A DNA stretch of 64,000 nt from Podarcis erhardii (taxonomy: Eukaryota): the NCBI GenBank assembly GCA_964252035.1, contig OZ176200.1; one strand, written 5' to 3'. Shown in pieces: positions 1 through 15,890 of the stretch. The notes under the pieces were generated by a model. It was given only the letters and a program-made list of their open reading frames with translations. It did not search any database and was not told the origin of the DNA. A program made the translations under genes and the position numbers. The number at the start of each line of letters is the position of its first letter. The first letter of the stretch is position 1.

Positions 1-1997
1 TGGCGAGCCGGGTCACGGGAGTAAACCAGTATGTCATCCAAGTACACCACCACGTACTTGTCTAACAAGTCCTGGAACACGTGGTTGATGTAGCGTTGGA
101 ACACAGCAGGCGCATTGCACAAACCGAAAGGCATAACCAAGTATTCGAACTGCCCGTACCGGGTCCCAAATGCTGTCTTCCACTCATCCCCGGCTCGGAT
201 CCGAATCAAGTTGTAGGCCCCCCGGAGGTCCAGCTTGGTGAACACCTGTGCCCCTTGCACCCGCTCCAGCAACTCCGAGATAAGGGGCAAGGGGTACCGG
301 TCTGGGATGGTAATTTTGTTCAGGGCTCGGTAATCATGGCAAGGGCGAAGTTCCCCACATTTCTTCTTAACAAAGAGCACTGGTGCCGCGGTAGGCGAGG
401 TGGAAGGCCTAATGAACCCACGCTCCAGGTTCTTGCGCAAGAAGTCCTGCAAAGCCTCGCGCTCTGGCTCTGTTAGAGAATATAAGCGACTCACTGGTAA
501 GGGCGCTCCGGGCTGGAGGTCTATGCCGCAGTCAAAAGGCCGATGCGGCGGCAGCTGGTCTGCCCCCCGTTCCTCGAACACGTCCTGGTAGTCCTGGTAC
601 ACGGCTGGGAGCGTGGGTGCTGCCTCCTCCGTGGGCGCGGCCGCCAGCGTCTCGGATTGAGCATGGGAACATGGGTCTGGGAAGTGCACAGTCCGTTTGA
701 CCCAGTCAATCTGAACGTTGTGAGCTTCCAGCCAGTCCATCCCGAGCACGAGGGGGAACCGGGGCATAGAGGCAATGTCCAAAGTTCGCAACTCCCGGTG
801 CTGCTGGAGACACAGGACCAGGGGCTGGGTCTCCTGAGTAACGGCTCCTGAACGTAGAAGCCGTCCGTCAATTGCTTCCACCTGGACCGGTTCTGGCTTG
901 TTCCGAAGTGGCACCTGATGATGGGCAGCAAAAGCAGCGTCCATATAAGAACGGGTTGCTCCTGAATCCACCAAAGCATGGGTAAGAATCCAGGGCCCAC
1001 CTGGAGGGTATAAACGTACCGGAACCATAAGATGTTGCAAGTCCATTGGTGCGGGCCCATTCTGCGCTGTTTGGGACCCCCGGTAGCTAGGGCCATCAGC
1101 TACTGGGGGTTGGCGGTTTCCCTGCGGCTGGCGTTTCTCAGGGCAGGACCGAGCGTAGTGTCCACTTCCGCCACAGTAGAGACATAGATTCCCCTCCCGA
1201 CGCCGCACCTTCTCTGCGGGGGAAAGGCGTGGCCGCACTGCCCCGAGCTGCATAGGCTCCTCCGATAACTCAGTTGTGACCGTGGGGCTGCCGGAAGAAA
1301 CTGGTGCCGAGAACTGGAGGTGTCGTCGGCCCCGGGCCTGGCGACGATCCTCCAGCCAGTCGTCTATCTGTAGACTCCGTTGAATGAGAGTGTCTAGCGT
1401 GGTGGGGCGTTCCATTGTGGCCAGCTGGTCCAGTATCTCGTCCGAAAGCCCTTCGAGATACTGGTCCCGCAATGCCGAGTCGTTCCAGGTCAAGTCCTGT
1501 GCCAACAGCCGAAACTCCGTGGTATATGCGGCCACCGTGGACTCGCCCTGTTTCAACTGCCGAATCGCCCGGTTGGCTTGACTCCCTTTCTGGGGGTTGC
1601 CGAACGCGGCCTCCAAAAGATTGCAAAACCCCGTATAGTCTGCCAGCAAGGGGGAGTCTTGCCTGAGTAGCGGCAACGCCCACTTGGCCGCCTGGTCCTT
1701 TAACAAACTAATCAAAAAGTGCACCTTGGTGCGGTCGTCAGGGAAGTTCCGGGCTCGCCCCTGAATATACAGCTTGGCTTGGGCGAGGAACATGGGAAAG
1801 CTGGCCGGGGCTCCATCAAATTTCTCGGGCAAAGCCACTGGGTACTTGCCAGGAGCCGGGGCGTTGGCCCCAGGAGCCGGTAGGGCTTCCAAGCGCTGCT
1901 GAAGTGCCGTAACCGCGTCGCTGAGCTGCTGCACGGTGTGAGTCAAGGCCTGGTTCTTCTGGGCCAAAGCCACCAGCGCAGCCACCTGGTCAGCCAT
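1..1997 (-). CDS. Gag-protease-reverse transcriptase polyprotein of copy B (partial, 665 codons, no stop within the window; absent from the ORF track because it runs off the edge)
   Basis: Hand translation from ATG 1997 (MADQVAALV...): PEKFDG, LKQG, EPMQLG, CCHC knuckle CLYCGGSGHYARSC, protease ALVDSGAT, VLGMDWL, RT motifs LPPHR, DYRALN, KLDLRGAY, KTAF, YLVMPFGLCNAP, and YLDD at 44-33. Confidence 0.95.
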   Translation of the reverse strand, partial: MADQVAALVALAQKNQALTHTVQQLSDAVTALQQRLEALPAPGANAPAPGKYPVALPEKFDGAPASFPMFLAQAKLYIQGRARNFPDDRTKVHFLISLLKDQAAKWALPLLRQDSPLLADYTGFCNLLEAAFGNPQKGSQANRAIRQLKQGESTVAAYTTEFRLLAQDLTWNDSALRDQYLEGLSDEILDQLATMERPTTLDTLIQRSLQIDDWLEDRRQARGRRHLQFSAPVSSGSPTVTTELSEEPMQLGAVRPRLSPAEKVRRREGNLCLYCGGSGHYARSCPEKRQPQGNRQPPVADGPSYRGSQTAQNGPAPMDLQHLMVPVRLYPPGGPWILTHALVDSGATRSYMDAAFAAHHQVPLRNKPEPVQVEAIDGRLLRSGAVTQETQPLVLCLQQHRELRTLDIASMPRFPLVLGMDWLEAHNVQIDWVKRTVHFPDPCSHAQSETLAAAPTEEAAPTLPAVYQDYQDVFEERGADQLPPHRPFDCGIDLQPGAPLPVSRLYSLTEPEREALQDFLRKNLERGFIRPSTSPTAAPVLFVKKKCGELRPCHDYRALNKITIPDRYPLPLISELLERVQGAQVFTKLDLRGAYNLIRIRAGDEWKTAFGTRYGQFEYLVMPFGLCNAPAVFQRYINHVFQDLLDKYVVVYLDDILVYSRDPAR

Positions 1998-2048
1998 GGC
2001 CTCTGGCTCTTCCCGAACGCACCCCAACGAAGGGGGAGTGCGGGTGTG

Positions 2049-2060
2049 GCGGGAGCAAAC
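2049..2060 (-). promoter_or_regulatory. Primer-binding site (non-tRNA, self-priming type)
   Basis: Immediately 3' of the LTR. It lacks the TGG start of tRNA PBSs, and its TTGCTCCCGC is perfectly complementary to GCGGGAGCAA in the LTR (2311-2302). Confidence 0.75.
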
Positions 2061-2702
2061 TGTGCTGGACCCGGGGGAAAGGTACCATGAGCGTAGTCTG
2101 AGTCCACACGAAGAGGGGCGAGGTCCGAGGCGGAGAGCCGGGCGGGGAACAGGAACGCTGGAACAGGAGGCCGAGCAGGGAACAGGAACACCGGATGGTC
2201 AGGAACAGGAGGCCGAGCAGGGAACAGGAGCACCGGATGGTCAGGAACAGGAGGCCAAGCAGGGATCAGGAACACAGGAAGGTCCAAAGCCAACAACGAC
2301 ATTGCTCCCGCAACCTGGGACCGGGCTGACTGGGCTTTTATCCTCTTCTAAGGCCAGGGGCGGTCCCGGCCCCCAGGAGCCCCGCCTCCTCTGGCCTTAA
2401 GGCGAGCACTCCTCCTGGGAGCAACCAGTTCCCTTCGCCTCTCTGCCCTAAGCCTCTGCAGATCAGGAGAGGCCGAAGGGTTACTGGGCCCTGGAGGAGG
2501 CTCACCTGTAGCCACTGAGTCCTCAAGCCCCTCTGGGGCCTGAAGGGTTTCACCTGGGGCCAGCTCCTGGTGCTCTGCCACAGGTGCAGGCTCTTCAGCA
2601 TCTAGGCCTTGCCCCAGTTCAGCCGGCCCTGGAGGCGGGGACTCCTGTGCAGGCTGGGATTCCTCTGGTTCATCCTCTGAATCGGAATCCCAGGCCATCA
2701 CA
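2061..2702 (-). repeat. 5' LTR of Gypsy copy B (642 bp)
   Basis: Starts TGTGATGGCC, ends CCAGCACA; aligns to LTR 4296-4894 with one extra 42-bp tandem unit plus 1 nt. Confidence 0.96.
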
Positions 2703-4650
2703 GAACCAGAAGGCAGATGCCCTGTCCCGGAAACCTGAAGACAACGCAGACACGGTACAGCAAGCAGAATCCACCACGATCCTACCTCCAGCTGCGTTCC
2801 TGGCCACCCAGGAGGCGGGACCACTGCAGGCTCGGGTGCGGGAACAGCAGCGGATCGACGCTTGGGCCCAGGAACGACTCCGGGAGCTGGCTGAAGGGTC
2901 CAGCCCACAGTATCCGGGGCTGGTCCTGCATCAGGGCCTTCTGCTGCACCACGGCCGTCTGTACATCCCGCCAGGGCCACTGCGGCTGGAGGTTCTCCGG
3001 ATGGCCCATGATGCCCCAGCAGCGGGGCACTTTGGACGGTATCGGACCACCCATCTGGTCAGTCGTGAGTTTTGGTGGCCCCGCCTGAAGGCCGACGTGG
3101 CTCGCTACGTTGCTGGTTGTGATGTCTGCCGGCGCGCCAAGGGTCCTACCGGGCGACCCCCCGGCCTACTTCAGCCACTGCCAGTTCCACCGCGCCCTTG
3201 GCACATGGTTTCGTTGGACTTTGTAGTGGACTTACCCCCGTCTCGTGGCTGTACCTGCCTTCTAGTGTTCTCCGACCATTTCACCAAGATGGTGCACTGC
3301 ACCCCCTGCCCATCTGTACCCACAGCCAAGGAAACCGCTCAGCTGTACCTTCAGCATGTCTTCCACCTGCATGGCCTACCAGAGCGCGTGGTGTCCGACC
3401 GGGGCGTTCAGTTCACATCCCGGTTCTGGCGAGCATTACACCAGACCCTCGGGACAGAGGTCTGCCTCTCGTCAGCCTACCACCCACAGACCGATGGCCA
3501 GACGGAACGGGCGAACGCGGTGCTGGAGCAGTACCTCCGGTGTTACTGCAGCTACCAGCAGGATGACTGGGTCGACCACCTGGCATTGGCGGAGTTCGCC
3601 TACAACAACGCGGTGAATGCGTCCACCCAGCAGACCCCGTTCCAGGCCAGTTACGGTTATCATCCACGGCTGTTTCCAGATGTGCTGCCGGCATCCGCGG
3701 TCCCGGCGGTGACGGAGTGGCTTCAAGAGCTCCAGTCCCAGCAACAGCTTTTGGTGGAGCAACTGCACCAGGCCAAGGAAGCGTACAAAGCCCAGGCCGA
3801 CCGCCACCGCCAGGTGGGGCCGGAACTTCGCGTCGGTGACCTGGTTTGGCTCTCCACTCGCCACCTCCACCCCTCTCGACCTTCGCGGAAGTTGGACGCC
3901 CGCTTCACCGGCCCGTTCCCTATCGTGGACCAAGTCTCTCCTGTAGCATTCCGTCTCCGGTTACCCGCAACCCTGAAGGTTCACCCGGTCTTCCACAGGT
4001 CCCTGCTGAGTCCGGTGGCCCCACCCGACGAGTTCCACCCGAACCGTCCCCGTCCGCAGCCAGTGTTGGTTCAGGGAGAGCCTGAGTATGAGGTGGAACG
4101 CATCCTGGACTCCCGATACCGCAGGGGAAAGCTGCAGTATCTCATTGACTGGAAGGGGTATGGACCGGAGGACCGTTCCTGGGAACCAGCGGCCAACGTC
4201 CACGCACCTGCCTGCCTCCGAGAGTTCCATGCGACGTACCCCGGCAAGCCGGGTCCGGACCCTCGGTTGAGGGGGGGGCCTGGGAGGGGGGATGGTGTGA
4301 TGGCCTGGGATTCCGATTCAGAGGATGAACCAGAGGAATCCCAGCCTGCACAGGAGTCCCCGCCTCCAGGGCCGGCTGAACTGGGGCAAGGCCTAGATGC
4401 TGAAGAGCCTGCACCTGTGACAGAGCATCAGGAGCTGGCTCCAGGTGAAGCCCTTCTGGCCCCAGAGGGGCTTGACGACTCAGTGGCCACAGGTGAGCCT
4501 CCTCCAGGGCCCAGTAACCCTTCGGCCTCTCCTGATCTGCAGAGGCTTAGGGCAGAGAGGCGAAGGGAACTGGTTGCCCCCAGGAGGAGTGCTCGCCTTA
4601 AGGCCAGAGGAGGCGGGGCTCCTGGGGGCCGGGACCGCCCCTGGCCTTAG
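2584..4650 (+). CDS. Chimeric ORF (688 aa): 40 aa from the antisense strand of LTR B + integrase-chromodomain of copy A + 116-aa U3-encoded tail
   Basis: ORF track plus domain motifs. The junction at 2702/2703 is in frame, and there is no stop between the chromodomain and TAG 4648-4650. Confidence 0.8.
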   Translation: MQALQHLGLAPVQPALEAGTPVQAGIPLVHPLNRNPRPSQNQKADALSRKPEDNADTVQQAESTTILPPAAFLATQEAGPLQARVREQQRIDAWAQERLRELAEGSSPQYPGLVLHQGLLLHHGRLYIPPGPLRLEVLRMAHDAPAAGHFGRYRTTHLVSREFWWPRLKADVARYVAGCDVCRRAKGPTGRPPGLLQPLPVPPRPWHMVSLDFVVDLPPSRGCTCLLVFSDHFTKMVHCTPCPSVPTAKETAQLYLQHVFHLHGLPERVVSDRGVQFTSRFWRALHQTLGTEVCLSSAYHPQTDGQTERANAVLEQYLRCYCSYQQDDWVDHLALAEFAYNNAVNASTQQTPFQASYGYHPRLFPDVLPASAVPAVTEWLQELQSQQQLLVEQLHQAKEAYKAQADRHRQVGPELRVGDLVWLSTRHLHPSRPSRKLDARFTGPFPIVDQVSPVAFRLRLPATLKVHPVFHRSLLSPVAPPDEFHPNRPRPQPVLVQGEPEYEVERILDSRYRRGKLQYLIDWKGYGPEDRSWEPAANVHAPACLREFHATYPGKPGPDPRLRGGPGRGDGVMAWDSDSEDEPEESQPAQESPPPGPAELGQGLDAEEPAPVTEHQELAPGEALLAPEGLDDSVATGEPPPGPSNPSASPDLQRLRAERRRELVAPRRSARLKARGGGAPGGRDRPWP
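2698..2698 (-). other. Start codon of the U3-encoded ORF in LTR B (ORF 2698->2348, 116 aa)
   Basis: MAWDSDSEDE...RRSARL...DRPWP*; same frame and length as 4300-4650. Confidence 0.6.
4282..4295 (+). promoter_or_regulatory. Polypurine tract
   Basis: GGGAGGGGGGATGG directly before the TG of the 3' LTR. Confidence 0.85.
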
Positions 4651-4894
4651 AAGAGGATAAAAGCCCAGTCAGCCCGGTCCCAGGTTGCGGGAGCAACGTC
4701 GTTGTTGGCTTTGGACCTTCCTGTGTTCCTGATCCCTGCTTGGCCTCCTGTTCCTGACTATCCGGTGTTCCAGTTCCCAGCTTGGCCTCCTGTTCCAGCG
4801 TACCTGTTCCCCGCCCGGCTCCCCGTCTTGGACCTCGCCCCTCTTCGTGTGGACTCTGCTTACACCCACGGTACCTTCCCCCGGGACCAGCACA
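4296..4894 (+). repeat. 3' LTR of Gypsy copy A (599 bp), TATA-like ATAAAA at 4657-4662
   Basis: TG...CA termini, homologous to 2061-2702; followed by TCGGC (expected right TSD). Confidence 0.96.
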
Positions 4895-5790
4895 TCGGCT
4901 GAAAGGCCATCAACATGGGATAAAGCATCCCCTACCACTCTCTGGAAACCATTTGGATCCATTAAGTGGCAGGGGCGGACCATCCGAATCGGTCCCACCT
5001 CCCTGCAGAGGGGATGGGTCGCAGAGAAGTCCAGTTGCACCAGGAAGTGATCTGACCATGGCACTTCTTTCGTTTCGCTTTTACTTAGTGTCAGATCACC
5101 AACATCCATAGAGGTAAACACCAGGTCCAAGGCATGTCCGTGGCTATGGGTTGGGCCAGACTTATTCAGGGACAGCACCATGGAGGCCATGCTTTCCACG
5201 AAGTCCCGAGCGCCCCCTTGTAAGGTTGTGTCGGCATGGATGTTAAAATCCCCTAGGACAACCAAGCTAGGTGTCTCCAGGAGAACATCCGCCACAACCT
5301 GAAGCAGCTCGGGCAGGGAATCCTTGGTGCAGCAGGGAGGTCGGTACACCAAAAGGAATCCTGTACTGCCCCTATTGCCCAACTTCCAGAACATGCACTC
5401 GGAAAACTGGGTCTTCCCAATAGGACGCCTGGTGCAAACTAATGACTTCCTAAAAATCACTGCAACCCCCCCTCCCCGCCCACATGACCTGGGTTGCTGT
5501 GCGTAAGAGAAACCTGGTGGACAAGCAGCGGCAAGGACAGGCCCATCTGCTTCATCCAACCAAGTCTGTTACACATGCCAGGTCAAGTCCTCCATCCATG
5601 ATCAAGTCATGGATGGCAGTGGTCTTATGAATCATTGACCTGGCATTGCACAGCAACACTTTCAGGTCATGTGGGTATCCCTTGCTGATTCTAGTATCCA
5701 TCCGGTTAGGACCGGACCTTAGACCTGATCTTAGACGGAATACGGCAGTCGGAAACAGTGTCAGGGCGGAAATTGCTTTAATTTCATTAA
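4895..5790 (-). mobile_element. L2-clade LINE fragment, ORF2 APE endonuclease region, interrupted by Gypsy copy A
   Basis: LKVLLCNARS (~5665), VT(E)TWLDE with a 2-nt deletion near 5560, RGGGVAV, VYRPP, LGDFNIH, PTH..GHALDL, WSDH. The reading frame is cut exactly at the LTR end (SHVDGLSAD). Confidence 0.88.
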
Positions 5791-8345: not shown

Positions 8346-10154
8346 TAACCTCTATGTCTGCATCTGAATTAGTTTGGTTTTCTAAAGGCGACCTAATGTT
8401 GCCTTCATTTTATTTGCATTGATTGTGTTTCACGTTAGTTATTGACAAATTAATTTTAAACTTTGTTTTCGTTTTACCTCATTTTTGTTTTTACATTAAT
8501 TTCAATGGAGAGCCAGTGCTGCCTGCAACACTGATGCTTTCCATCCAAATGGCATGCATTTTGTAGCCTTAATTATCAGATACCATATTTCATATAGATT
8601 GGTGAAAGAGTACCCACCTTCTAGGCAGTTAAAAAGATGTGCATCCCATAAGCTTCTCATTGATTTAAGTGGGAGACCCAGTGAAATTTCTCTTGCTTGT
8701 AACTATTTCAGTTCAGATGTTGGGAAATTTGTAGGCAATCTGTTACCATCTCTGTGCAACAGGCCTGCCAAAATGCAGACAGATTAGACAAAAGCCTCCC
8801 TATTTGATTATTGGAGACTTCTTGCAGACATTGAACCGACGTTTCTTTGCTCCAGATGAGACACTTGACATGCTATGTCAGTTTCTCAAGTCTTTCAACT
8901 CTATACAGAGAAATGCATCAATATACAATACACTGCAGTGCCTCTTTTCAACTTTAGGAATGTATCCATTTGTAAAACTGTGCCTCCTAAGTAAAACAAA
9001 TGCAAGAAACTAAAATCAAGGTGAGAAACTAAAGTCAAGGGACTTGCATTAGTTTTTTACATTGAAACTAATGCAAAACTAATATGAGAACTATAGACTA
9101 ACAGTGAGCTCATTCTCCAAAATGACACAATTATCATGCAGGGAAGAGGTATCAGCAAACTTGGAGGAATGGTGTAGTGTGTAGAAGTAGGGGGAAATGC
9201 AGTGTTATGAGTTTAGAGGGACAGTCTGGGTGGTATTCTTGGGTCCCTTCCTCCTCCAGGACTCCTGTATCCAGGGAGGGTTAGGATGTAGTAGAAGACA
9301 CTGCTGAACTGGTCATACTAGTTTCCTTGTAAGAAAAATGGCCTTAGCTGACCACTTAAGTGTTCTCATCAGCTTATCAAAACGTGAGCTAAGCTGCAAT
9401 AGCTAAAACTAGGTAATGGTGCTCTCCAGGAAGTCGGGGAGGCATTTTCCCACTCCTCACACCTGCCTGGATGATACAGCATCCCAGGACAAAGAACAAT
9501 AGACCAAAGGGAGCTGGATATGGGAGAATTGTGTGAGACAGTTTTACTGATGCTAGAAGCTGGAGGGACAGAGACATGCCTTCTCTGTGCTGGATACAAA
9601 GCTGGATTTGGTGTTCTCCTGGTAAGCAAATGGGGAAGTAAGTTTTGTTGGAGTGCTAACACTAGGAGCCCCTCCATGTGATACTCAGTTTGTATATATC
9701 CTCAGGACCCAACAGTCTCTGTTGACCTTCATTCCAAGGAAGCTGAACCCTGGGTAATGCACTAGAATCTCTTACTGAGATTGCATTTGAGAGCAAGGGG
9801 AGCCCTGAGAAGTAAAACCACCAAGAACAGCCCAATGATGACACAACTTTCTTGGCTGGCATGGAATACAATAGACTGTGAGGGAGAAATGGGAAGTTGT
9901 GGGGAAGAAGAGAAATGTATTGGAGTATCCTGGAAAGGGCATGTCTATCTGTCTGGAATACTGAACACTACAGCTTCAGAAGACAGCCTTCAGAATGGAG
10001 CCCTGTAAATGGAAATGAGACAATAGAAGATAATCTTATATGCTTTCTGTGGCAACATCTCACTTTAGCTCCTACAGAAGGCAAGTGGCATTTCATTGTA
10101 GGACAATCTTCTCTAAAGCTACTTATTGTATTATTTTATCTTCTTTGGTTAAAG

Positions 10155-10303
10155 GGCGAGCTAACCACTGGTCTGCGATCATTGGTGGGTCTCATTCAAA
10201 GAACTACGTACTTTGGGAATATGGAGGATATGCAAGTGAAGGAGTTAAGCAAGTTGCAGAGCTTGGATCACCAGTAAAAATGGAAGAAGAAATTCGGCAG
10301 CAG
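10155..10303 (+). CDS. SPON1: F-spondin (spondin-1) internal coding exon, 149 bp, Spondin_N domain (phase 1 / phase 0; probably exon 6 by human numbering)
   Basis: Encodes (R)RANHWSAIIGGSHSKNYVLWEYGGYASEGVKQVAELGSPVKMEEEIRQQ, which I recognise as vertebrate SPON1. Acceptor ttatcttctttggttaaag|G; donor CAG|gtaatt. Confidence 0.97.
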
Positions 10304-12485
10304 GTAATTGTCATTTAATTTATTAAAACAAACAAACAAAAAAATCGTTTAAAAATGTATAGTTGCCAGGAGCTGAAAATGTGAATCAGGCTTGAAAGAT
10401 CTTGCTACTATTAGGCTTCACTGTTTTAGCAAACCTTAACAAAGTCAATTAAAGTTTTCCTGCCTAATGATTTTAAGATTTAGCCCTGTGACTGAATATT
10501 CAGTAAAGAGCGTCTTCTGATTCACTCTCTTCTTAATGAAAACATTGAACTATTGACTTTACTTATAGCTTTGACTTAGGACTGTTCTGTACATGTGTGC
10601 ATTTTTCGCAGATCAATGTGCAAATGATCTGCAGCATCTTCATATCATACACAGGGAGAAATAAGTATGGCATGTGAATTACTGCACTTTACACCATCCC
10701 AGATTGGGGGGGAAAGAGTCAATTTTCTGGGTGAAAATGAAAAGTGCGGTAGTGGATGGTGTCTGACTTCTAGGAATAGGTGTCAAATAAAGCTAGGCTT
10801 ATACAAACTAAGGTTTGAAAAATCAGTGGTGCAATCCTGAACTCTCACTTGCCATTTTTGTATAAGTAACACATAAAATATTAAGTACAGAAGAGTGGCG
10901 GTAATTAAAGATAGCTTGTTTGTTAATTCATCTTCTGGGGCCTGTGCATTTAGTAGGGAAATGAGATCCCACTCTTACTGGAATCAGTGTCTCTGCTTAT
11001 ATTTGTTCCCTTTCCTGAAACTTAACCAGTGAGTCTGTTATCTATTGCAAATGTACAGAAAATAGCAGCATGAATGAAGGGACTATGGGACTTGCAGTTG
11101 TTTTTAAAGAGACCATGGTTTGTAACCAGTGCTCCACACGTGTAGTTCCAGTGGCACAACAGGGCTTCTATTTCCTCTCCTCCAACAGCATCCCCCTCCC
11201 ATCTGCTCTGCAGGTGTCTCCCAGACAGCAGGAGGAGTGGACTGAAGGGGACAGGAAAGGAAGAAAAAGCACATGGAAGTCCATTGTGGCAATAGAGCTA
11301 CAGCTTAGGATTTGGCCTCTTATCTCAGTCCCTCAAATATGAAGTCCTAAAGTTTTAATAGAGAAATATTGATGTCACATGTAAAGTCCCATAGGCTATA
11401 TCAGGGAAAAACACTGGGAAAGGCAGTTTTCTTTTTTAAAACTTTTAACATACTGTGCATGTCCTGCTTTTAAAAAATGTTAAATCGAGAATATAAGATA
11501 GTACAATATAGATCGTTGCGATTCTGGTAGTCTCTGTTCTAGTGCCTAATACATCATTTGAAATGAAGCTGGTAAGTTTTTGCTGGCTAAATAGCTTGCT
11601 ATTAATTTTTGCTTCAATATTGGATTGCTGCCTATAATTTCATGGAATTATAGTGAAATAATTAAATAGGAGTTATGCTCACTCTCATATGAATCTTGAT
11701 ATAGCTAATTTCTCACTTAGAAACCCACTGCACTTTGTCCCTCTAACCTCTTACTGAAGTGCTTTCTAAAAAGTATCTGACAACACCATTAGATATTTGT
11801 TCACCTGCTTTATTCCTATCTCAAAAAAGTTTTTTTAATTTTTATTTTGGAAAGAGGCTTAAGAGAAAAGGGCTTTGATTAAGCTAATATTGTTAATATA
11901 CCTAGCTAACATGATACAATGAACATGTAGCAAAGTTAAGTTTGGAGCCTCAAAGCACTTATATTGGAAGCCACAGGTGGAAAACTCAAGTCTGACCTAA
12001 AATCAAGTGACTTATTTGTAGAAATCCATTGTTTAGGAAATGCTGACATGTAGGTGATGCAAGTCCAAACGCTGTAATGAAATAAACTTCCTTCTTTTGA
12101 CTTCTTCATTCCAGACGAATGTGTTCAAGCTTAATGGAAGTTACTTGATTTCCCTACTCTACCTCATAGTTGTGGAAGCCATATTTGTATGGGTTGTTTT
12201 TTTCTTCACCCTAAAAGGGTGGAATATAACTTATATATTTATATAGACCATTTATAGCATGCCCTTCATCCAAGGATTTTGGGGTGGGTAACAGCAAAAT
12301 TCAACTAAAATACCACATCCATCCATAAGATCGTAAAAACGCAAGCCAGCCTGGGGGTTTTCCACATAAATGTGGTTGTCTAGATGGGCCTTTGGTCTGA
12401 TTCAGCAGGGCTCTTATTTTGTTTTTGTGCTCTTGAAGACAAAATTTCTGATGTGGGGTGCCCATGTGTCCTGCTTAAGAGAGGA

Positions 12486-12556
12486 ATAGAATCACAGAAT
12501 TGTAGAGTTGGAAGAGACCCAACGGGTCATCTAGTCCAAACTTCTGCAATGCAGGA
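12486..12556 (-). mobile_element. 3' part of a tRNA-SINE with CR1-like tail
   Basis: Reverse complement matches the 3' half of the SINE at 31756-31900. Confidence 0.7.
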
Positions 12557-14108
12557 AACACAGCTAAAATATCCTATTTTAAGACATTCTTTATTTTAGG
12601 AGTGTTGCCAGATGTTGCTAGACTACATAACTCCCTGGCTCTTCACCATGCTAGCTCGGCCTGATAGGTATTTGAGTCCAACAATATACAGAGGGCCATA
12701 GCTTTGCCACTCTTTGCCACTCTTGCTCTGTTTGAAGGACTGCCTTGTGATTCGCCCAAGTCCAGTTCAAAGACAGAGTTAAAGAACTATAAGAAGGAAA
12801 AACTGGGACCTTGAAGTTTCCCATCAATCTGGACAGCAAACTGAAGAGGCACACAGACCAGACTGAGAGGGTCTTCCCCACTTCAGTGAGATGTATTATA
12901 TTTCAGCTTAAATTATACAAATCCTTTCTAAATTTATCTCTGTATCTATAATTCGCATATGCAACTTCTGGCAAATCAGTGTACTCTTCTGCCATTTTTA
13001 TTTGGTGATTCTTTTTGACAATGTGTATGTAAGTGGCCATCCCAGAGATCACATGTCAAGTTGGGTTTTGTACCATACAATGGTCCCTCAATTACAAAAC
13101 ATGAAGATTTCCCCATCTATAAAGTAATCCACCTTCAGAATGACTTTATTCTTCATTTTATGACATGGGTAAAAGAAGATATCAAGAAAATTATTTGCTG
13201 GGCTGTACAAAAAAATAAAAATAAAGGCTCAGGAATCTGCATCGCGGAATGGCAGAACAAGGAGCTACATATGGCAATTGAAGGCAGTGGCTGACCCCCA
13301 GGGCTAAATTTGAGTATTTGATATGCATAGGTGGCTCTTGTTATCTTCAAGGAGAGCTTCTGTCTGTGATTCAAGCAGGAGAAATTTGTACCCAGGAGTC
13401 TTCCCTCAGGCTATACTAAGGTTTTGTGCTAAATGCGTCCTGAGCTAATACTTCCAGGCTTGAATTTAAATGGGGACTCGTTTTCATATATCAAATGTGA
13501 AATGAATGAATAATTGAATTCCCCTGGTCTCACCCAGGTCTGCTTAGCTAAGCAAGAAAAGTGTGTATGCCCATAAGGTAAAGCTTGGCCATTAGAGTGA
13601 AATACTGTGCTTCTAATGTGACTTATTTCATTTCCCATAGGTGCATAATGGGTGCTGCTTAGGGGATAACTAGAAAATGCAGAGGATGTGTGTCTGCACT
13701 CAAAATAGCAGCCTTTGTGTTTTTTCTCTTCTCTCCTTTTGCTCCCAGTGATGTCTAATAATGCACAGTTTGTGATGTGACAGTATCAGTTGCAGAGCTT
13801 TTCCTGCTTTTGCTTCACTTCATTGGTCATCTATTTGGGGATAAAGAAAACAGAGCATGGGTGTTTTGGTATAAATCCATGTATAAATCTAGATATTTTT
13901 GAGAGACAGCAATGCATTAATGACTACTAGTGAGAATGGCTATATATTACAATATCATTGGCAGGATGCCTCTTAATGTTGATTACTGGGGAACAACAGT
14001 GTGAGACTGTATATTTCTTTCCAGGTTTTAGTTTGGTTTTTAAGAAACACCTACAATTGTAACTATATAAGCTGTTTCAGATGGGGGTTATTTCTAGCCC
14101 CCCCCATC

Positions 14109-14170
14109 TGGAGATGCCAGGGATTGCACCTGAGACCTTCTGCAAGCAAGGCAGATGTTCTAGCTCTGAA
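14109..14170 (-). mobile_element. tRNA-derived SINE fragment
   Basis: GGGATTGCACCTGAGACCTTCTGC...GATGTTCTAGCTCTGA is a reverse-complemented degenerate B/A-box head. Confidence 0.55.
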
Positions 14171-15890
14171 TATCCATGCAATGCAGCAGAAGATACAATA
14201 TTAAATTTGGGACTTGTGCATTAAGGTGTTTTGTTTTTGTTCTTTCTGTAACACCTTACCTAAAATTTGAAGTGACAAATATATCAATATATCCTCAGAA
14301 AAATCCTAAGAGGTCAAAGTTAAGTGCAAGATTATTTTTTCTCTTTTTTTCTTTTAAAAAATGTTATCACATGTGCAGCATGACATTTGGACAAGGTTGC
14401 TGGTGCAGGTGATGTTTTTATATGCCAGGCATCATGGTTATCTAGGTTGTGTTCAAACATGCCAGGGGTACATGACTGGATTAAATAAAGGCCCCTCAAT
14501 GAACTGCATAGCTGAGCTGCGATTTAAAGGATTCCCTGCACCCAGACCTAGCATGTTTATGAACCCATACTAATTCTGCAACAAAGGAGAAGAAAAGCAG
14601 TTTTCTGAATGCTAAAACATGTTAAGTTTCCTCAGAGCCAGTGCATAGGGTTGGCTATAGAAATTGACTAGTGTGGTGCAGGGGAGAGGAGTCTGGCAAG
14701 AGCTGGTTGGATGACATTGTGTGGTACTCTGCAAGGAAGTGTGGAAGACTTGGTGCTAGTGCCACTTGGAGGCCCTGGGCAAGAAGTTTTGTAGTGCTTC
14801 TGGATCTGACCCGTAATGTGTTGTTATCCTTACATGAGGCAACAATGAGGTCATGTGATGTTTGACAGCCAGTATATACTAAAGTGATATATGTTGCTTG
14901 TATTCAAAAGTACAGATTACTATCATTATATTAAACCGTGCAAATTTCCAACCATTTGATAAACATTAAAATGTTCTTTATGTAAGTGCCACTAAATTCT
15001 GCAGATGTGCTTGGGTTTTTGTTTTGTTTTGTTTTGCATATACATGTAAATTGTCATCTGTATTGGGACGTTATAATTTTACCTTCTTGGGTGAAAAATC
15101 ACCACCTGACTGCTTGTTGTTGGTTAAAGTTAAATGCCTTGTAAGATAAATTCAATAACTCAAGGTTGCTTTACCCTTTGATTGCAACAACTATTGATTG
15201 CTATATGAGCTTTGTTTGCACTTGGTCCAATAAGCGAATTGAGGAAGTCAGCTTCTAGGAATTAATAGTCTTAATGTTGCATAGCTGGTAAATAACTATT
15301 ACAGGAACCTGTTTTGTGTAATGGACTTTTCCTTGAAAACTCTGGGACAGTAACAGATTATGACTGGTTTTTAAACACTTGCTGCAAGATCCCAATTAGC
15401 ACCTATGGAAGTTTTCTATCCCTCCTGCCATGCATCTTTATTGTTGAATAACCACACCTTTCCAGTATAAATAATGTTAAAAGTCTGCAGAGATGAGCAG
15501 GTTCCAGGGTTTTTTTTTTTTGTGTTTTTTGCACATGATTTTTCTACTCTCTCTCTCTTTACATTGAGCTCATTTTTAGCCTAGGAATTTGTTTTCAGCA
15601 CCAGAACAGAGGTCATAGTCATTTCATATGTAAAGCTCCTCCTAGTTTTCCCCCCAAACTGTTTTTTCCCCAGCAGCCTAATTTAGAAGAGAAGGAAGAC
15701 TTTTTTTGCTGTTTTTTTCTAAATGTGAGCTGATAAACTGCAAATTACTCTTCTTAGTCTACTGTTAATTATCCACTGATCTTCCAGTAGATTCCAGTCT
15801 AACCTTCTGCCTGCCCTGACCAGCCCATACTTTATGGTACTGCACCAGGTTGTTTTACCAAGGTCTGTACCTACACACCACTAGCATAGA

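What the first reader, a model, noticed from the sequence alone, without database searches (positions are those of the whole stretch)
4084..4650. The entire U3 of the LTR is protein-coding: acidic tail with an HMGN-like RRSARL nucleosome-anchor motif, fused to integrase-chromodomain
Seen: in both LTRs an ATG at LTR nt 5 (Kozak GTGATGG) opens 116 codons that stop 6 nt before the TATA-like box, so the ORF fills U3 exactly. The two copies differ by 8 substitutions (4 synonymous, 4 non-synonymous) with no stops or indels. The peptide is Asp/Glu/Pro-rich, then basic: QRLRAERRRELVAPRRSARLKARG (RRSARL at 4582-4599). In copy A pol does not stop after the chromodomain but reads through the PPT into this ORF. 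Established: RRSARLSA is the core of the HMGN nucleosome-binding domain, which docks on the H2A-H2B acidic patch, and chromovirus chromodomains guide integration targeting. Inference: a possibly undescribed dual chromatin-tethering module (chromodomain plus arginine anchor) encoded in the LTR. Caveat: fusion needs exactly 8 G at 4271-4278; with 7 G pol stops at TGA 4298-4300 and the tail would need a frameshift or another route. GC-rich sequence also has few stop codons by chance.
Basis: partly seen in the sequence, partly recalled or inferred. Interest (0 to 1): 0.78.

Follow-up and report, generated by a model that had tools for sequence, protein, structure and literature searches.

The report
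LTR-encoded integrase tail in lizard chromovirus
In a family of lizard (Podarcis) Gypsy retrotransposons the integrase gene runs on past its chromodomain, through the polypurine tract and across about 90% of the promoter half (U3) of the LTR, encoding a disordered tail that evolves like a real protein and ends in a conserved arginine motif identical to the nucleosome-binding core of HMGN proteins; the coding part is well supported, the nucleosome-anchor function is still only a hypothesis.

Summary
The 116-codon frame (4300-4650) starts at LTR nt 5 and stops 6 nt before the TATA-like box. It is continuous with pol in copy A. The two LTRs belong to two different elements nested head to head.

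One stop-free frame is weak evidence: 3-4% by chance at 65% GC. Comparison is much stronger. I found three diverged LTR lineages: the window family, a P. muralis solo LTR with an in-frame 18-nt deletion, and a lineage about 40% identical. All keep the frame from LTR nt 5 to the TATA box. All keep MAWDxDSxSEPEE and LQRLRxERRRxL…RRSARLxA.

dN/dS is 0.14-0.37 in this frame and about 1 or more in both shifted sense frames. In short-read contigs of two organisms no indel reaches 5% inside the ORF. The frame-fusing G-run lengths are the majority form.

I conclude that U3 encodes a selected, disordered C-terminal integrase tail. Plant CRM group A chromoviruses are a precedent: their 3' LTR encodes the CR motif. 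So this is a new variant of a known kind.

The acidic-patch anchor role of RRSARL is plausible but untested. A nuclear-import signal is the main rival. Other first-stage notes report the same motif on other pieces of this genome.

The parts
2703..4295 (+). Element A, 3' part of pol: end of RNase H (ADALSR), integrase zinc finger (2971-3141), catalytic core (3190-3486), Tf2-type SH3 (3835-4017), chromodomain, linker and PPT
   Evidence: Pfam hits Integrase_H2C2 2e-20, rve 2e-11, SH3_Tf2-1 2e-18, Chromo 4e-15; single ORF 2584-4650
4087..4230 (+). Type I chromodomain of the integrase, with all three aromatic cage positions occupied (Y, W, Y)
   Evidence: Pfam Chromo. Alignment to HP1 alpha/beta chromodomains, E 1e-14, places Y/W/Y at the cage positions. 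Folded with pLDDT about 80-86
4231..4299 (+). Linker REFHATYPGKPGPDPRLRGGPGRGDGV. It contains the PPT and the first 4 nt of the LTR
   Evidence: The same peptide is fused to MAW[DE]SDSE in P0001 and P0002
4271..4278 (+). G8 run whose length sets the frame between pol and the U3 ORF
   Evidence: A 1-nt deletion here is seen in 0.16% (X1) and 15% (X8) of contig depth. The P. lilfordi copy L001 has shorter G runs, and there pol stops at the TGA at LTR nt 3-5
4296..4894 (+). 3' LTR of element A (TGTG...CACA)
   Evidence: Alignment with LTR B and with the LTRs in L001 and L002
4300..4650 (+). U3 reading frame, 116 codons plus TAG. Residues 1-75 are acidic and Pro-rich (net charge -19); residues 76-116 are basic (net +8)
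   Evidence: dN/dS 0.14-0.37. No indel at 5% or more in contigs. Predicted disordered apart from one helix
4537..4614 (+). Conserved basic block LQRLRAERRRELVAPRRSARLKARGG. The predicted short helix covers tail residues about 78-90
   Evidence: Conserved in three lineages. C-block dN/dS 0.14-0.16, p 3e-7 to 5e-6; randomisation p 0.0003-0.0006
4582..4599 (+). RRSARL, identical to the first six residues of the HMGN core RRSARLSA
   Evidence: Invariant in all 7 sequences that reach this block. Motif definitions from PMC12487698 and PMC13347269
4656..4663 (+). TATA-like box GATAAAAG, 30 nt upstream of the inferred transcription start
   Evidence: Conserved in all LTRs aligned. In the divergent lineage, and in a read variant, the ORF stop is the TAA inside this box
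4687..4696 (+). GCGGGAGCAA, inferred start of R. It is complementary to the PBS-like TTGCTCCCGC downstream of the 5' LTR (Tf1-type self-priming)
   Evidence: Box conserved in window, L001 and L002
2061..2702 (-). 5' LTR of element B (a different element, inverted). It carries the second copy of the U3 ORF (2698 down to 2348)
1..2060 (-). Element B internal region: PBS-like 2049-2058, gag ATG near 1998, protease and RT running off the window. Broken by stops

Best explanation
The U3 region of this lacertid chromovirus family encodes the C-terminal tail of Pol/integrase.

Shown. In the genomic RNA, U3 lies 3' of pol. In the predominant form the pol frame runs through the chromodomain and the Gly-rich linker encoded by the PPT. 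It then enters the LTR at nt 1 and stops at the TATA box. The tail is about 110-142 residues long. It is predicted to be disordered: an acidic, Pro-rich stretch, then a short basic helix, then an extended RRSARL motif. The tail is under purifying selection at the protein level, strongest in the basic block.

Inferred. After protease processing the integrase would carry two chromatin-contact elements. The first is a type I chromodomain (an HP1-like methyl-lysine reader). The second is an HMGN-type arginine motif that inserts into the H2A-H2B acidic patch. Together they would hold the intasome on a target nucleosome and bias integration towards marked, heterochromatic chromatin. The same DNA also has to serve as the LTR promoter, so it carries two functions. 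The tail has no detectable relatives outside these LTRs, so it probably arose by pol reading through into the LTR.
For: Continuous ORF with integrase, SH3 and chromodomain.

Fusion:
- The same fused junction RLRGGPGRGDGVMAW occurs in two other Podarcis muralis proteins.
- The fusing G-run length is the majority form in DNA contigs of two organisms; 1-nt deletions are 0.16% and 15% of depth.

Coding:
- Three lineages keep the frame from LTR nt 5 to the TATA box despite a diverged middle with in-frame length changes: one 18-nt deletion, and a net +78 nt in the third lineage.
- dN/dS is 0.30 (p 0.003) against the closer lineage. Against the distant lineage it is 0.16 for the C block and 0.20 for the N block (p 5e-6 and 4e-4). 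Both shifted sense frames give 0.9-1.7.
- A context-preserving randomisation gives p 0.02 for the closer lineage and 0.0003-0.0006 for the C block.
- Differences by codon position are 7:4:18 and 12:8:24.
- ORF divergence is 8.7%, against 39% plus many gaps in R-U5 of the same LTR pair.
- No indel reaches 5% inside the 351-nt ORF, while indels are listed just upstream and downstream.

Motif:
- RRSARL is invariant in all sequences that reach it.
- It fits the experimentally validated HMGN-like class: HMGN RRSARLSA, Dsup RRSSRLTS, Dot5 RRSARIAT. In each of these the three arginines are essential, and one is the acidic-patch anchor (PMC12487698, PMC13347269).
- The motif sits in a predicted disordered segment, as short linear motifs do.

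One nested insertion of the family into a copy of itself is consistent with targeting to repeats, but it is a single case.
Against: There is no binding evidence of any kind. Histone sequences could not be given to the complex predictor, and PMC12487698 reports that AlphaFold 3 models HMGN-nucleosome complexes poorly.

The tail is not an HMGN homologue (no Pfam hit at E up to 1; no PDB hit). It lacks the Lys-rich flank of the HMGN nucleosome-binding domain. A six-residue match in an Arg-rich stretch could be convergence, or could serve another role such as an NLS.

The selection tests rest on only three lineages, that is two independent contrasts, and on solo LTRs for two of them. Fusion to pol is therefore documented for one lineage only.

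The only full-length copy retrieved (L001) has pol ending at the TGA of LTR nt 3-5 as assembled.

The middle of the tail evolves about four times faster than the chromodomain (P0001 against the window).

The antisense frame that shares wobble positions also shows low dN/dS (0.25-0.42), although it contains stops.

Tail codon usage (GC3 0.53, CpG o/e 0.27) differs from pol (0.71, 0.72).

There is no Ribo-seq or proteomic evidence.
Confidence: 0.4

Rival explanations
1. The tail is a real, selected integrase extension, but its conserved basic block is a nuclear-import signal or a nucleic-acid-binding patch rather than an acidic-patch anchor. It would bring the integrase or pre-integration complex into the nucleus or stabilise it on DNA. 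The match to HMGN would be coincidental.
For: All the coding and selection evidence is the same. The block is Arg-rich over about 25 residues (RLRAERRRELVAPRRSARLKAR) and conserved as a whole, not only in RRSARL. From my own knowledge, C-terminal basic nuclear localisation signals are described for Ty1 and Ty3 integrases. There is no homology to HMGN.
Against: By my own inspection the block fits the classical monopartite and bipartite NLS consensus poorly: it has a single Lys and no K-K/R-x-K/R. The exact RRSARL is kept in a lineague only about 40% identical overall, while the flanking residues vary (VAP, VSP, STC before the motif; K or Q after it). That points to a specific motif rather than to general basicity. 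The two functions do not exclude each other.
Confidence: 0.25
2. The U3 frame is expressed as a separate small protein of 116-142 residues from its own ATG at LTR nt 5, as an accessory gene comparable to MMTV sag or HIV nef. Possible routes are termination-reinitiation at the overlapping TGATG in copies where pol stops at LTR nt 3-5, a subgenomic RNA, or read-through transcripts of solo and 5' LTRs.
For: The ATG, in a strong context (G at -3, G at +4), is conserved in all three lineages. In L001 pol stops at a TGA that overlaps this ATG. Between 6% and 15% of contig depth in X8 carries a 1-nt deletion at each of three sites upstream of the LTR. Gene builders repeatedly start models at this ATG (P0003-P0007).
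Against: The first 8-15 nt of an LTR are constrained as the integrase recognition end, so conservation of the ATG carries little information. The fused frame is the majority form. RNA reads show no splice joint into U3 and no cluster of transcript starts. L001 is riddled with contracted G runs elsewhere, which suggests decay or homopolymer errors. The gene models are automatic longest-ORF chimeras.
Confidence: 0.12
3. No functional protein. The open frame and the conserved blocks reflect cis-acting constraints on U3 (the integrase recognition end and promoter-proximal factor sites) together with the scarcity of stop codons in 65% GC DNA.
For: The chance of a stop-free frame is 3-4% per copy, or 28% in any of six frames. 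The conserved blocks sit at the LTR edge and within about 150 nt of the TATA box, where cis elements are expected. The middle evolves almost neutrally. The N-block randomisation test is not significant (p 0.08).
Against: Cis constraints do not produce a three-base periodicity of substitutions, or dN/dS of 0.14-0.37 in one sense frame only. The frame is kept across lineages whose middle part is unalignable and differs by 78 nt. Small indels are absent in the ORF but present on both sides.
Confidence: 0.08

Closest known systems
Plant CRM-clade group A chromoviruses (centromeric retrotransposons) with the CR motif (Neumann et al. 2011, PMC3059260)
   Same: In this Ty3/Gypsy chromovirus the polyprotein frame runs on into the 3' LTR. 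The LTR encodes the C-terminal putative targeting domain of the integrase. The region is variable, with one conserved block.
   Different: In CRM the CR motif takes the place of the chromodomain. Here a complete type I chromodomain is kept and the LTR-encoded tail is added after it. No similarity between the tail and any plant protein was detected: only Podarcis hits among 1.84 billion representatives. The host is a vertebrate, the element self-primes like Tf1 rather than using a tRNA-Met PBS, and the ORF occupies about 90% of U3.
HMGN nucleosome-binding core and HMGN-like motifs of tardigrade Dsup and yeast Dot5 (PMC12487698, PMC13347269)
   Same: RRSARL is identical to the first six residues of RRSARLSA. 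All three arginines shown to be essential in HMGN, Dsup and Dot5 are present. The motif lies in a disordered segment and is preceded by Pro, as in Dsup (PPRRSSRLT).
   Different: There is no family homology (Pfam HMG14_17 not matched). There is no Lys-rich DNA-contacting flank. The acidic region lies N-terminal rather than C-terminal to the motif. The carrier is a transposon integrase. Binding is untested.
Integrase C-terminal tethering peptides: MLV integrase tail with BET ET domain (PMC4027182), Ty1 integrase C-terminus with Pol III AC40/AC19 (PMC10050235)
   Same: A short motif in a disordered C-terminal integrase tail is proposed to dock on a host chromatin-associated surface and bias integration.
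   Different: Those partners are specific host proteins and are demonstrated experimentally. Here the proposed partner is the nucleosome core itself. The tail is encoded inside the LTR.
Viral arginine anchors on the acidic patch: KSHV LANA N-terminus, prototype foamy virus Gag chromatin-binding sequence (from my own knowledge)
   Same: A mobile or viral element would use an Arg-containing peptide to attach to the H2A-H2B acidic patch.
   Different: Those peptides sit on an episome tether or on Gag, not on integrase. Their sequences are unrelated to RRSARL.
Retroviral genes overlapping U3: MMTV sag, HIV/SIV nef, foamy virus bet (from my own knowledge)
   Same: Protein-coding sequence occupies U3 of the 3' LTR, so the promoter DNA carries two functions.
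   Different: Those are separate accessory proteins made from spliced mRNAs. Here the frame is a continuation of pol, and no splice into U3 is seen in RNA reads.

Membership tests
Ty3/Gypsy chromovirus (Tf1/sushi-like) | Integrase with H2C2 zinc finger, DDE core, SH3-like domain and a C-terminal chromodomain | tested here: met
   Pfam Integrase_H2C2, rve, SH3_Tf2-1 and Chromo, all above their curated cut-offs
Ty3/Gypsy chromovirus (Tf1/sushi-like) | LTRs with TG...CA ends and a 5-bp target-site duplication | tested here: met
   TGTG...CACA in all LTRs. TSD CATAG flanks the full-length copy in L001. The TSD cannot be tested for the window copies because both are truncated by the window or by nesting
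Ty3/Gypsy chromovirus (Tf1/sushi-like) | Self-priming: the PBS is complementary to the first bases of the transcript | tested here: met
   TTGCTCCCGC (2049-2058, minus strand), 2 nt after the 5' LTR, is complementary to GCGGGAGCAA (4687-4696), 30 nt after the TATA-like box. The transcription start itself was not mapped (one search lists no start cluster)
Type I (HP1-like) chromodomain | All three aromatic cage residues present | tested here: met
   Alignment to the CBX5/CBX1 chromodomains places Y, W and Y at the Y/W/F cage positions
HMGN protein family (Pfam HMG14_17) | Sequence-profile match to the HMGN family | tested here: not met
   No Pfam family for the tail at E up to 1. No PDB sequence match at E up to 10
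HMGN-like nucleosome-binding motif class (HMGN, Dsup, Dot5) | Core RRS[AS]R[LI] with three arginines, in a disordered region | tested here: met
   RRSARL at 4582-4599, invariant across lineages. pLDDT below 50 around it. Motif definitions
HMGN-like nucleosome-binding motif class (HMGN, Dsup, Dot5) | Binding to the nucleosome that depends on the arginines and the acidic patch | not testable with these tools
   No histone sequence was available to the complex predictor. PMC12487698 reports poor AlphaFold 3 performance on HMGN-nucleosome complexes
LTR-encoded integrase C-terminal targeting domain (as in plant CRM group A) | The polyprotein ORF continues through the PPT into the 3' LTR | tested here: met
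   ORF 2584-4650. The same junction occurs in P0001 and P0002. It is the majority G-run form in contigs
LTR-encoded integrase C-terminal targeting domain (as in plant CRM group A) | Sequence similarity to the CR motif | tested here: inconclusive
   No CR-motif sequence was compared directly. The exhaustive protein search with the tail returned only Podarcis proteins plus one repeat-rich chance hit
Retroviral U3 accessory gene (sag/nef type) | Separate protein made from its own, usually spliced, mRNA | tested here: inconclusive
   No splice joint into U3 and no start cluster in two RNA runs, but family depth there is low (1-35 reads)

The most novel reading that the evidence does not exclude
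A vertebrate retrotransposon evolved, by pol reading through into its own LTR promoter, a new integrase tail whose conserved RRSARL motif is a true HMGN-type acidic-patch anchor. Together with the type I chromodomain it would form a two-point nucleosome reader (histone H3 tail mark plus H2A-H2B surface) that steers integration. It would be the first HMGN-like motif on a mobile-element integrase, and a case of promoter DNA that also codes for protein under selection.
Probability: 0.3. Interest if true: 0.8.

Novelty: new variant of a known kind. Interest (0 to 1): 0.6.

Why it matters
Where a retroelement integrates depends on what its integrase holds on to. The known tethers are host proteins (BET, LEDGF, Pol III subunits, Sir4) or histone marks read by chromodomains.

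An integrase that combines a methyl-lysine reader with an acidic-patch anchor would be a new and simple targeting design. It can be tested directly with peptides and recombinant nucleosomes.

The locus also shows that a vertebrate LTR promoter region can be almost entirely coding and under protein-level selection. This matters for three reasons:
- LTR annotation, because U3 is normally treated as non-coding.
- Dating LTRs by their divergence.
- Gene builders, several of which have already produced chimeric 'genes' that start at this LTR ATG.

The arrangement also parallels the plant centromeric retrotransposons. LTR-encoded integrase tails may therefore be a recurrent solution among chromoviruses.

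Tried and rejected
- Other copies in the window: blastn found only the two LTRs.
- Pfam on the tail: no family. ESM Atlas feature search: no usable hit. PDB sequence search of the basic block: nothing at E up to 10.
- Word-index protein searches: with the tail, with the integrase-plus-tail region, and with a profile of eight tails. Only Podarcis proteins came back. The exhaustive search of 1.84 billion representatives gave 7 hits. Six are Podarcis LTR-derived models and one (P0008) is a repeat-rich chance match. Absence from other lizards cannot be concluded, because transposon ORFs are rarely annotated and no vertebrate genome collection was searchable.
- Exact look-ups for P0001, P0003, P0005 and P0007: not on record. 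No further pol-LTR junction DNA was obtained.
- A candidate third LTR start in L001 (17160, minus strand) was a chance match.
- Host-gene capture as the origin of the tail: rejected for lack of any non-LTR homologue.
- Antisense coding: rejected, because all antisense frames carry stops. The antisense frame that shares wobble positions does inherit a low dN/dS.
- L001 as evidence against the fusion: given little weight. Every frame break inspected in that copy (pol at 14829-14831, the 5' LTR ORF, both PPT runs) is a contracted G run.
- Complex prediction was not used. Histones could not be supplied from session sequences, and a result would not have been decisive.
- Literature searches found no description of this lizard family or of U3 coding in vertebrate Gypsy elements.
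Full report
WHAT IS THERE

The finding lies at the 3' end of a Ty3/Gypsy chromovirus copy, element A, on the plus strand. From 2703 the window carries the end of RNase H, then the integrase zinc finger, catalytic core, Tf2-type SH3 domain and a chromodomain (4087-4230) (Pfam). A Gly-rich linker follows that doubles as the polypurine tract (PPT). The 3' LTR runs from 4296 to 4894 (TGTG...CACA).

The chromodomain aligns to HP1 alpha/beta with Y, W and Y at the three aromatic cage positions, so it is a type I chromodomain.

The reading frame 2584-4650 is uninterrupted. It crosses the G8 run at 4271-4278, enters the LTR, and stops at TAG 4648-4650. That is 6 nt before ATAAAAG (4657-4663).

GCGGGAGCAA (4687-4696) lies 30 nt after this box. 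It is complementary to TTGCTCCCGC just downstream of the other LTR. This is the Tf1-type self-priming arrangement. It places the start of R at about 4687, so the ORF covers nt 5-355 of a roughly 391-nt U3.

THE SECOND COPY

The second LTR (2061-2702) is on the opposite strand. It is the 5' LTR of another element, B, whose gag, protease and RT run leftwards out of the window. It abuts A's pol at 2702/2703. The two 'LTR copies' of the finding therefore come from two different, nested elements.

The count of 8 substitutions, 4 synonymous and 4 not, with no indel, is correct.

IS IT MORE THAN CHANCE?

Not from one copy alone. The whole element is GC-rich (59-65%, against 43% for the window). A 116-codon stop-free frame appears in 2.7-4% of shuffles in a given frame and in 28% in any of six frames. 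The decisive evidence is comparative.

Protein searches recovered only Podarcis sequences:
- Two 'chromo domain-containing' proteins of P. muralis carry the same fused junction ...RLRGGPGRGDGVMAW[DE]SDSE... (P0001, P0002).
- Several automatic gene models start at the LTR ATG (P0003-P0007).

Two of these models could be traced to DNA.
- L001 (P. lilfordi) holds a full-length copy at 9997-15638. It has a 5-bp target duplication (CATAG) and near-identical LTRs.
- L002 (P. muralis) holds two solo LTRs. One is 81% identical to ours over the whole LTR (8.7% diverged in the ORF) and has an in-frame 18-nt deletion in the ORF. The other is much more divergent, about 41% amino-acid identity, with an ORF of 142 codons.

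All three lineages share the following:
- The LTR starts TGTGATGGCCTGGGA.
- The frame stays open from nt 5 to the TATA box. In the divergent lineage the stop is the TAA inside the box.
- The N-terminal block MAWDxDSxSEPEE is kept.
- The C-terminal block SNPxxSPxLQRLRxERRRxL...RRSARLxAxxGG is kept.
- The middle is diverged, and the length differences are multiples of three.

SELECTION

Nei-Gojobori estimates in the ORF frame give the values below.

| Comparison | dN/dS | Fisher p |
|---|---|---|
| Window A vs closer lineage (whole ORF) | 0.30 | 0.003 |
| Window A vs distant lineage, N block | 0.20 | 4e-4 |
| Window A vs distant lineage, C block | 0.16 | 5e-6 |
| Closer vs distant lineage, C block | 0.14 | 3e-7 |

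The two shifted sense frames give 0.9-2.3, none significantly below 1.

Differences fall on codon positions 7:4:18 and 12:8:24.

A more conservative randomisation re-places the observed changes on sites of the same base and CpG context. It gives p = 0.02 for the closer lineage, 0.0003-0.0006 for the C block, and 0.08 for the N block.

The antisense frame that shares wobble positions inherits a low ratio (0.25-0.42). It contains stops, and it scores worse than the sense frame in the distant comparisons.

In the same LTR pair the ORF is 8.7% diverged. R-U5 is 39% diverged and full of gaps. This is the reverse of the usual pattern, in which U3 is the most variable part of an LTR.

READS

Short-read contigs of two organisms and two RNA runs were laid on 3400-4950.
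- The LTR is 5-100 times deeper than pol, which points to many solo LTRs and related families.
- The N and C blocks of the ORF are deeper than its middle.
- No indel reaches 5% inside 4300-4650.
- One-base deletions are listed at 4260, 4271 (the G8 run; 0.16% of depth in X1, 15% in X8) and 4286. Further indels are listed from 4652 onward.
- The fused G-run length is therefore the majority form.
- The indels at 4652 and 4659 occur at frequencies similar to T>C at 4648. Together they would move the stop to the TAA of the TATA box, as in the divergent lineage.
- The 21 best-supported substitutions listed inside the ORF fall 7:2:11 on codon positions, with one more in the stop codon. Only 40 of the 151 substitutions across the stretch were shown.
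- RNA reads cover pol at low depth in one orientation and the LTR in both. There are no splice joints into U3 and no clustered starts or ends.

THE COUNTER-EXAMPLE

In L001 both PPT G runs are shorter (5+5 against 8+6). There pol ends ...RLRGPGRGMV at the TGA of LTR nt 3-5, which overlaps the ATG (TGATG).

Every frame break I inspected in that copy is a contracted G run. These are in the chromodomain region, in the 5' LTR ORF, and in the two PPT runs. I read this as decay or homopolymer error. It does keep the separate-ORF or reinitiation rival alive.

STRUCTURE

AlphaFold2 folds the chromodomain (pLDDT about 80-86). It leaves the tail disordered (pLDDT below 50), apart from a low-confidence helix over PDLQRLRAERRRE just before RRSARL. 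The tail is acidic over residues 1-75 (net -19) and basic over residues 76-116 (net +8).

HOW IT MOST LIKELY WORKS

Shown: the tail is coding, selected, and in this family fused to integrase.

Inferred: it is a targeting or tethering extension. RRSARL equals the first six residues of the HMGN core RRSARLSA. HMGN2 and Dsup bind the acidic patch through this motif, with an arginine anchor (cryo-EM, PMC12487698). Yeast Dot5 (RRSARIAT) needs the same three arginines for acidic-patch-dependent nucleosome binding (PMC13347269). The motif here lies in a disordered context on a protein that already carries a histone-mark reader. A two-point nucleosome grip is therefore a coherent mechanism.

It remains untested. 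The tail is not an HMGN homologue. The main rival for the basic block is a nuclear-import or nucleic-acid-binding role.

COMPARISON WITH WHAT IS KNOWN

The general design is not new. [quoted passage not shown] Integrase C-terminal tails are established tethers for MLV and Ty1 (PMC4027182, PMC10050235).

Four things are new here, as far as my searches reach:
- The host is a vertebrate.
- A complete type I chromodomain is kept upstream of the LTR-encoded tail.
- The ORF occupies about 90% of U3.
- The conserved motif is HMGN-type.

I therefore class it as a new variant of a known kind.

Other first-stage notes of this scan report the same motif and U3 ORFs on other pieces of this genome. I treated these as leads only. 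My three-lineage result was obtained independently from public Podarcis loci.

LIMITS
- There are only three lineages, that is two independent contrasts.
- Fusion to pol is documented for one lineage.
- No vertebrate genome collection could be searched, so the taxonomic spread is unknown.
- There is no translation or binding evidence.

Noticed in passing
window 2061-2702 (-) against 2703 onward (+): Element B's 5' LTR abuts the middle of element A's pol, head to head. This looks like one copy of the family inserted into another, as expected for a chromodomain-targeted element, but it is a single case and the target duplication lies outside the window.
   Followed up: partly
window 2049-2058 (-) and 4687-4696 (+): The PBS-like TTGCTCCCGC after the 5' LTR is complementary to GCGGGAGCAA, 30 nt past the TATA-like box. 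This is Tf1-type self-priming and fixes the likely U3/R border. The box is conserved in L001 and L002.
   Followed up: partly
window 4727-4768; LTR B 2160-2284: A 42-nt unit in R/U5 varies in copy number between the LTRs. RNA reads and a contig show 'goes back 42' joints, so the repeat number is polymorphic across copies.
   Followed up: no
window 4300-4650 against 2703-4295: The tail and pol share one frame but differ in composition. CpG o/e is 0.27 against 0.72, and GC3 is 0.53 against 0.71. This is consistent with a separate origin of the tail or with added promoter constraints.
   Followed up: no
L001 9997-15638 (P. lilfordi OX395138): A full-length copy with TSD CATAG and near-identical LTRs. 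Its pol and its 5' LTR ORF are broken. The breaks inspected are contracted G runs, which suggests homopolymer errors in the assembly or early decay.
   Followed up: partly
L001 10001-34873; L002 10001-14293: Public gene models start at the LTR ATG and splice into unrelated downstream exons. One is a P. lilfordi model annotated as 'G_PROTEIN_RECEP_F3_4 domain-containing protein' with an ANF_receptor Pfam hit. Others are P. muralis LOC114604991 and Ensembl gag fusions. They look like annotation chimeras seeded by the LTR ORF.
   Followed up: partly
window 4895-4950: The DNA immediately right of LTR A is itself high-copy (depth rises again; many reads have loose ends at 4894). Element A therefore sits inside another repeat.
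   Followed up: no
window 4284-4387 and 4492-4595 (RNA runs X23, X24): Reads of the opposite orientation pile up on two U3 blocks and carry a fixed set of variant letters, including a Cys in place of the third Arg of the motif. They probably come from one or a few diverged LTR copies lying antisense in expressed host transcripts.
   Followed up: no
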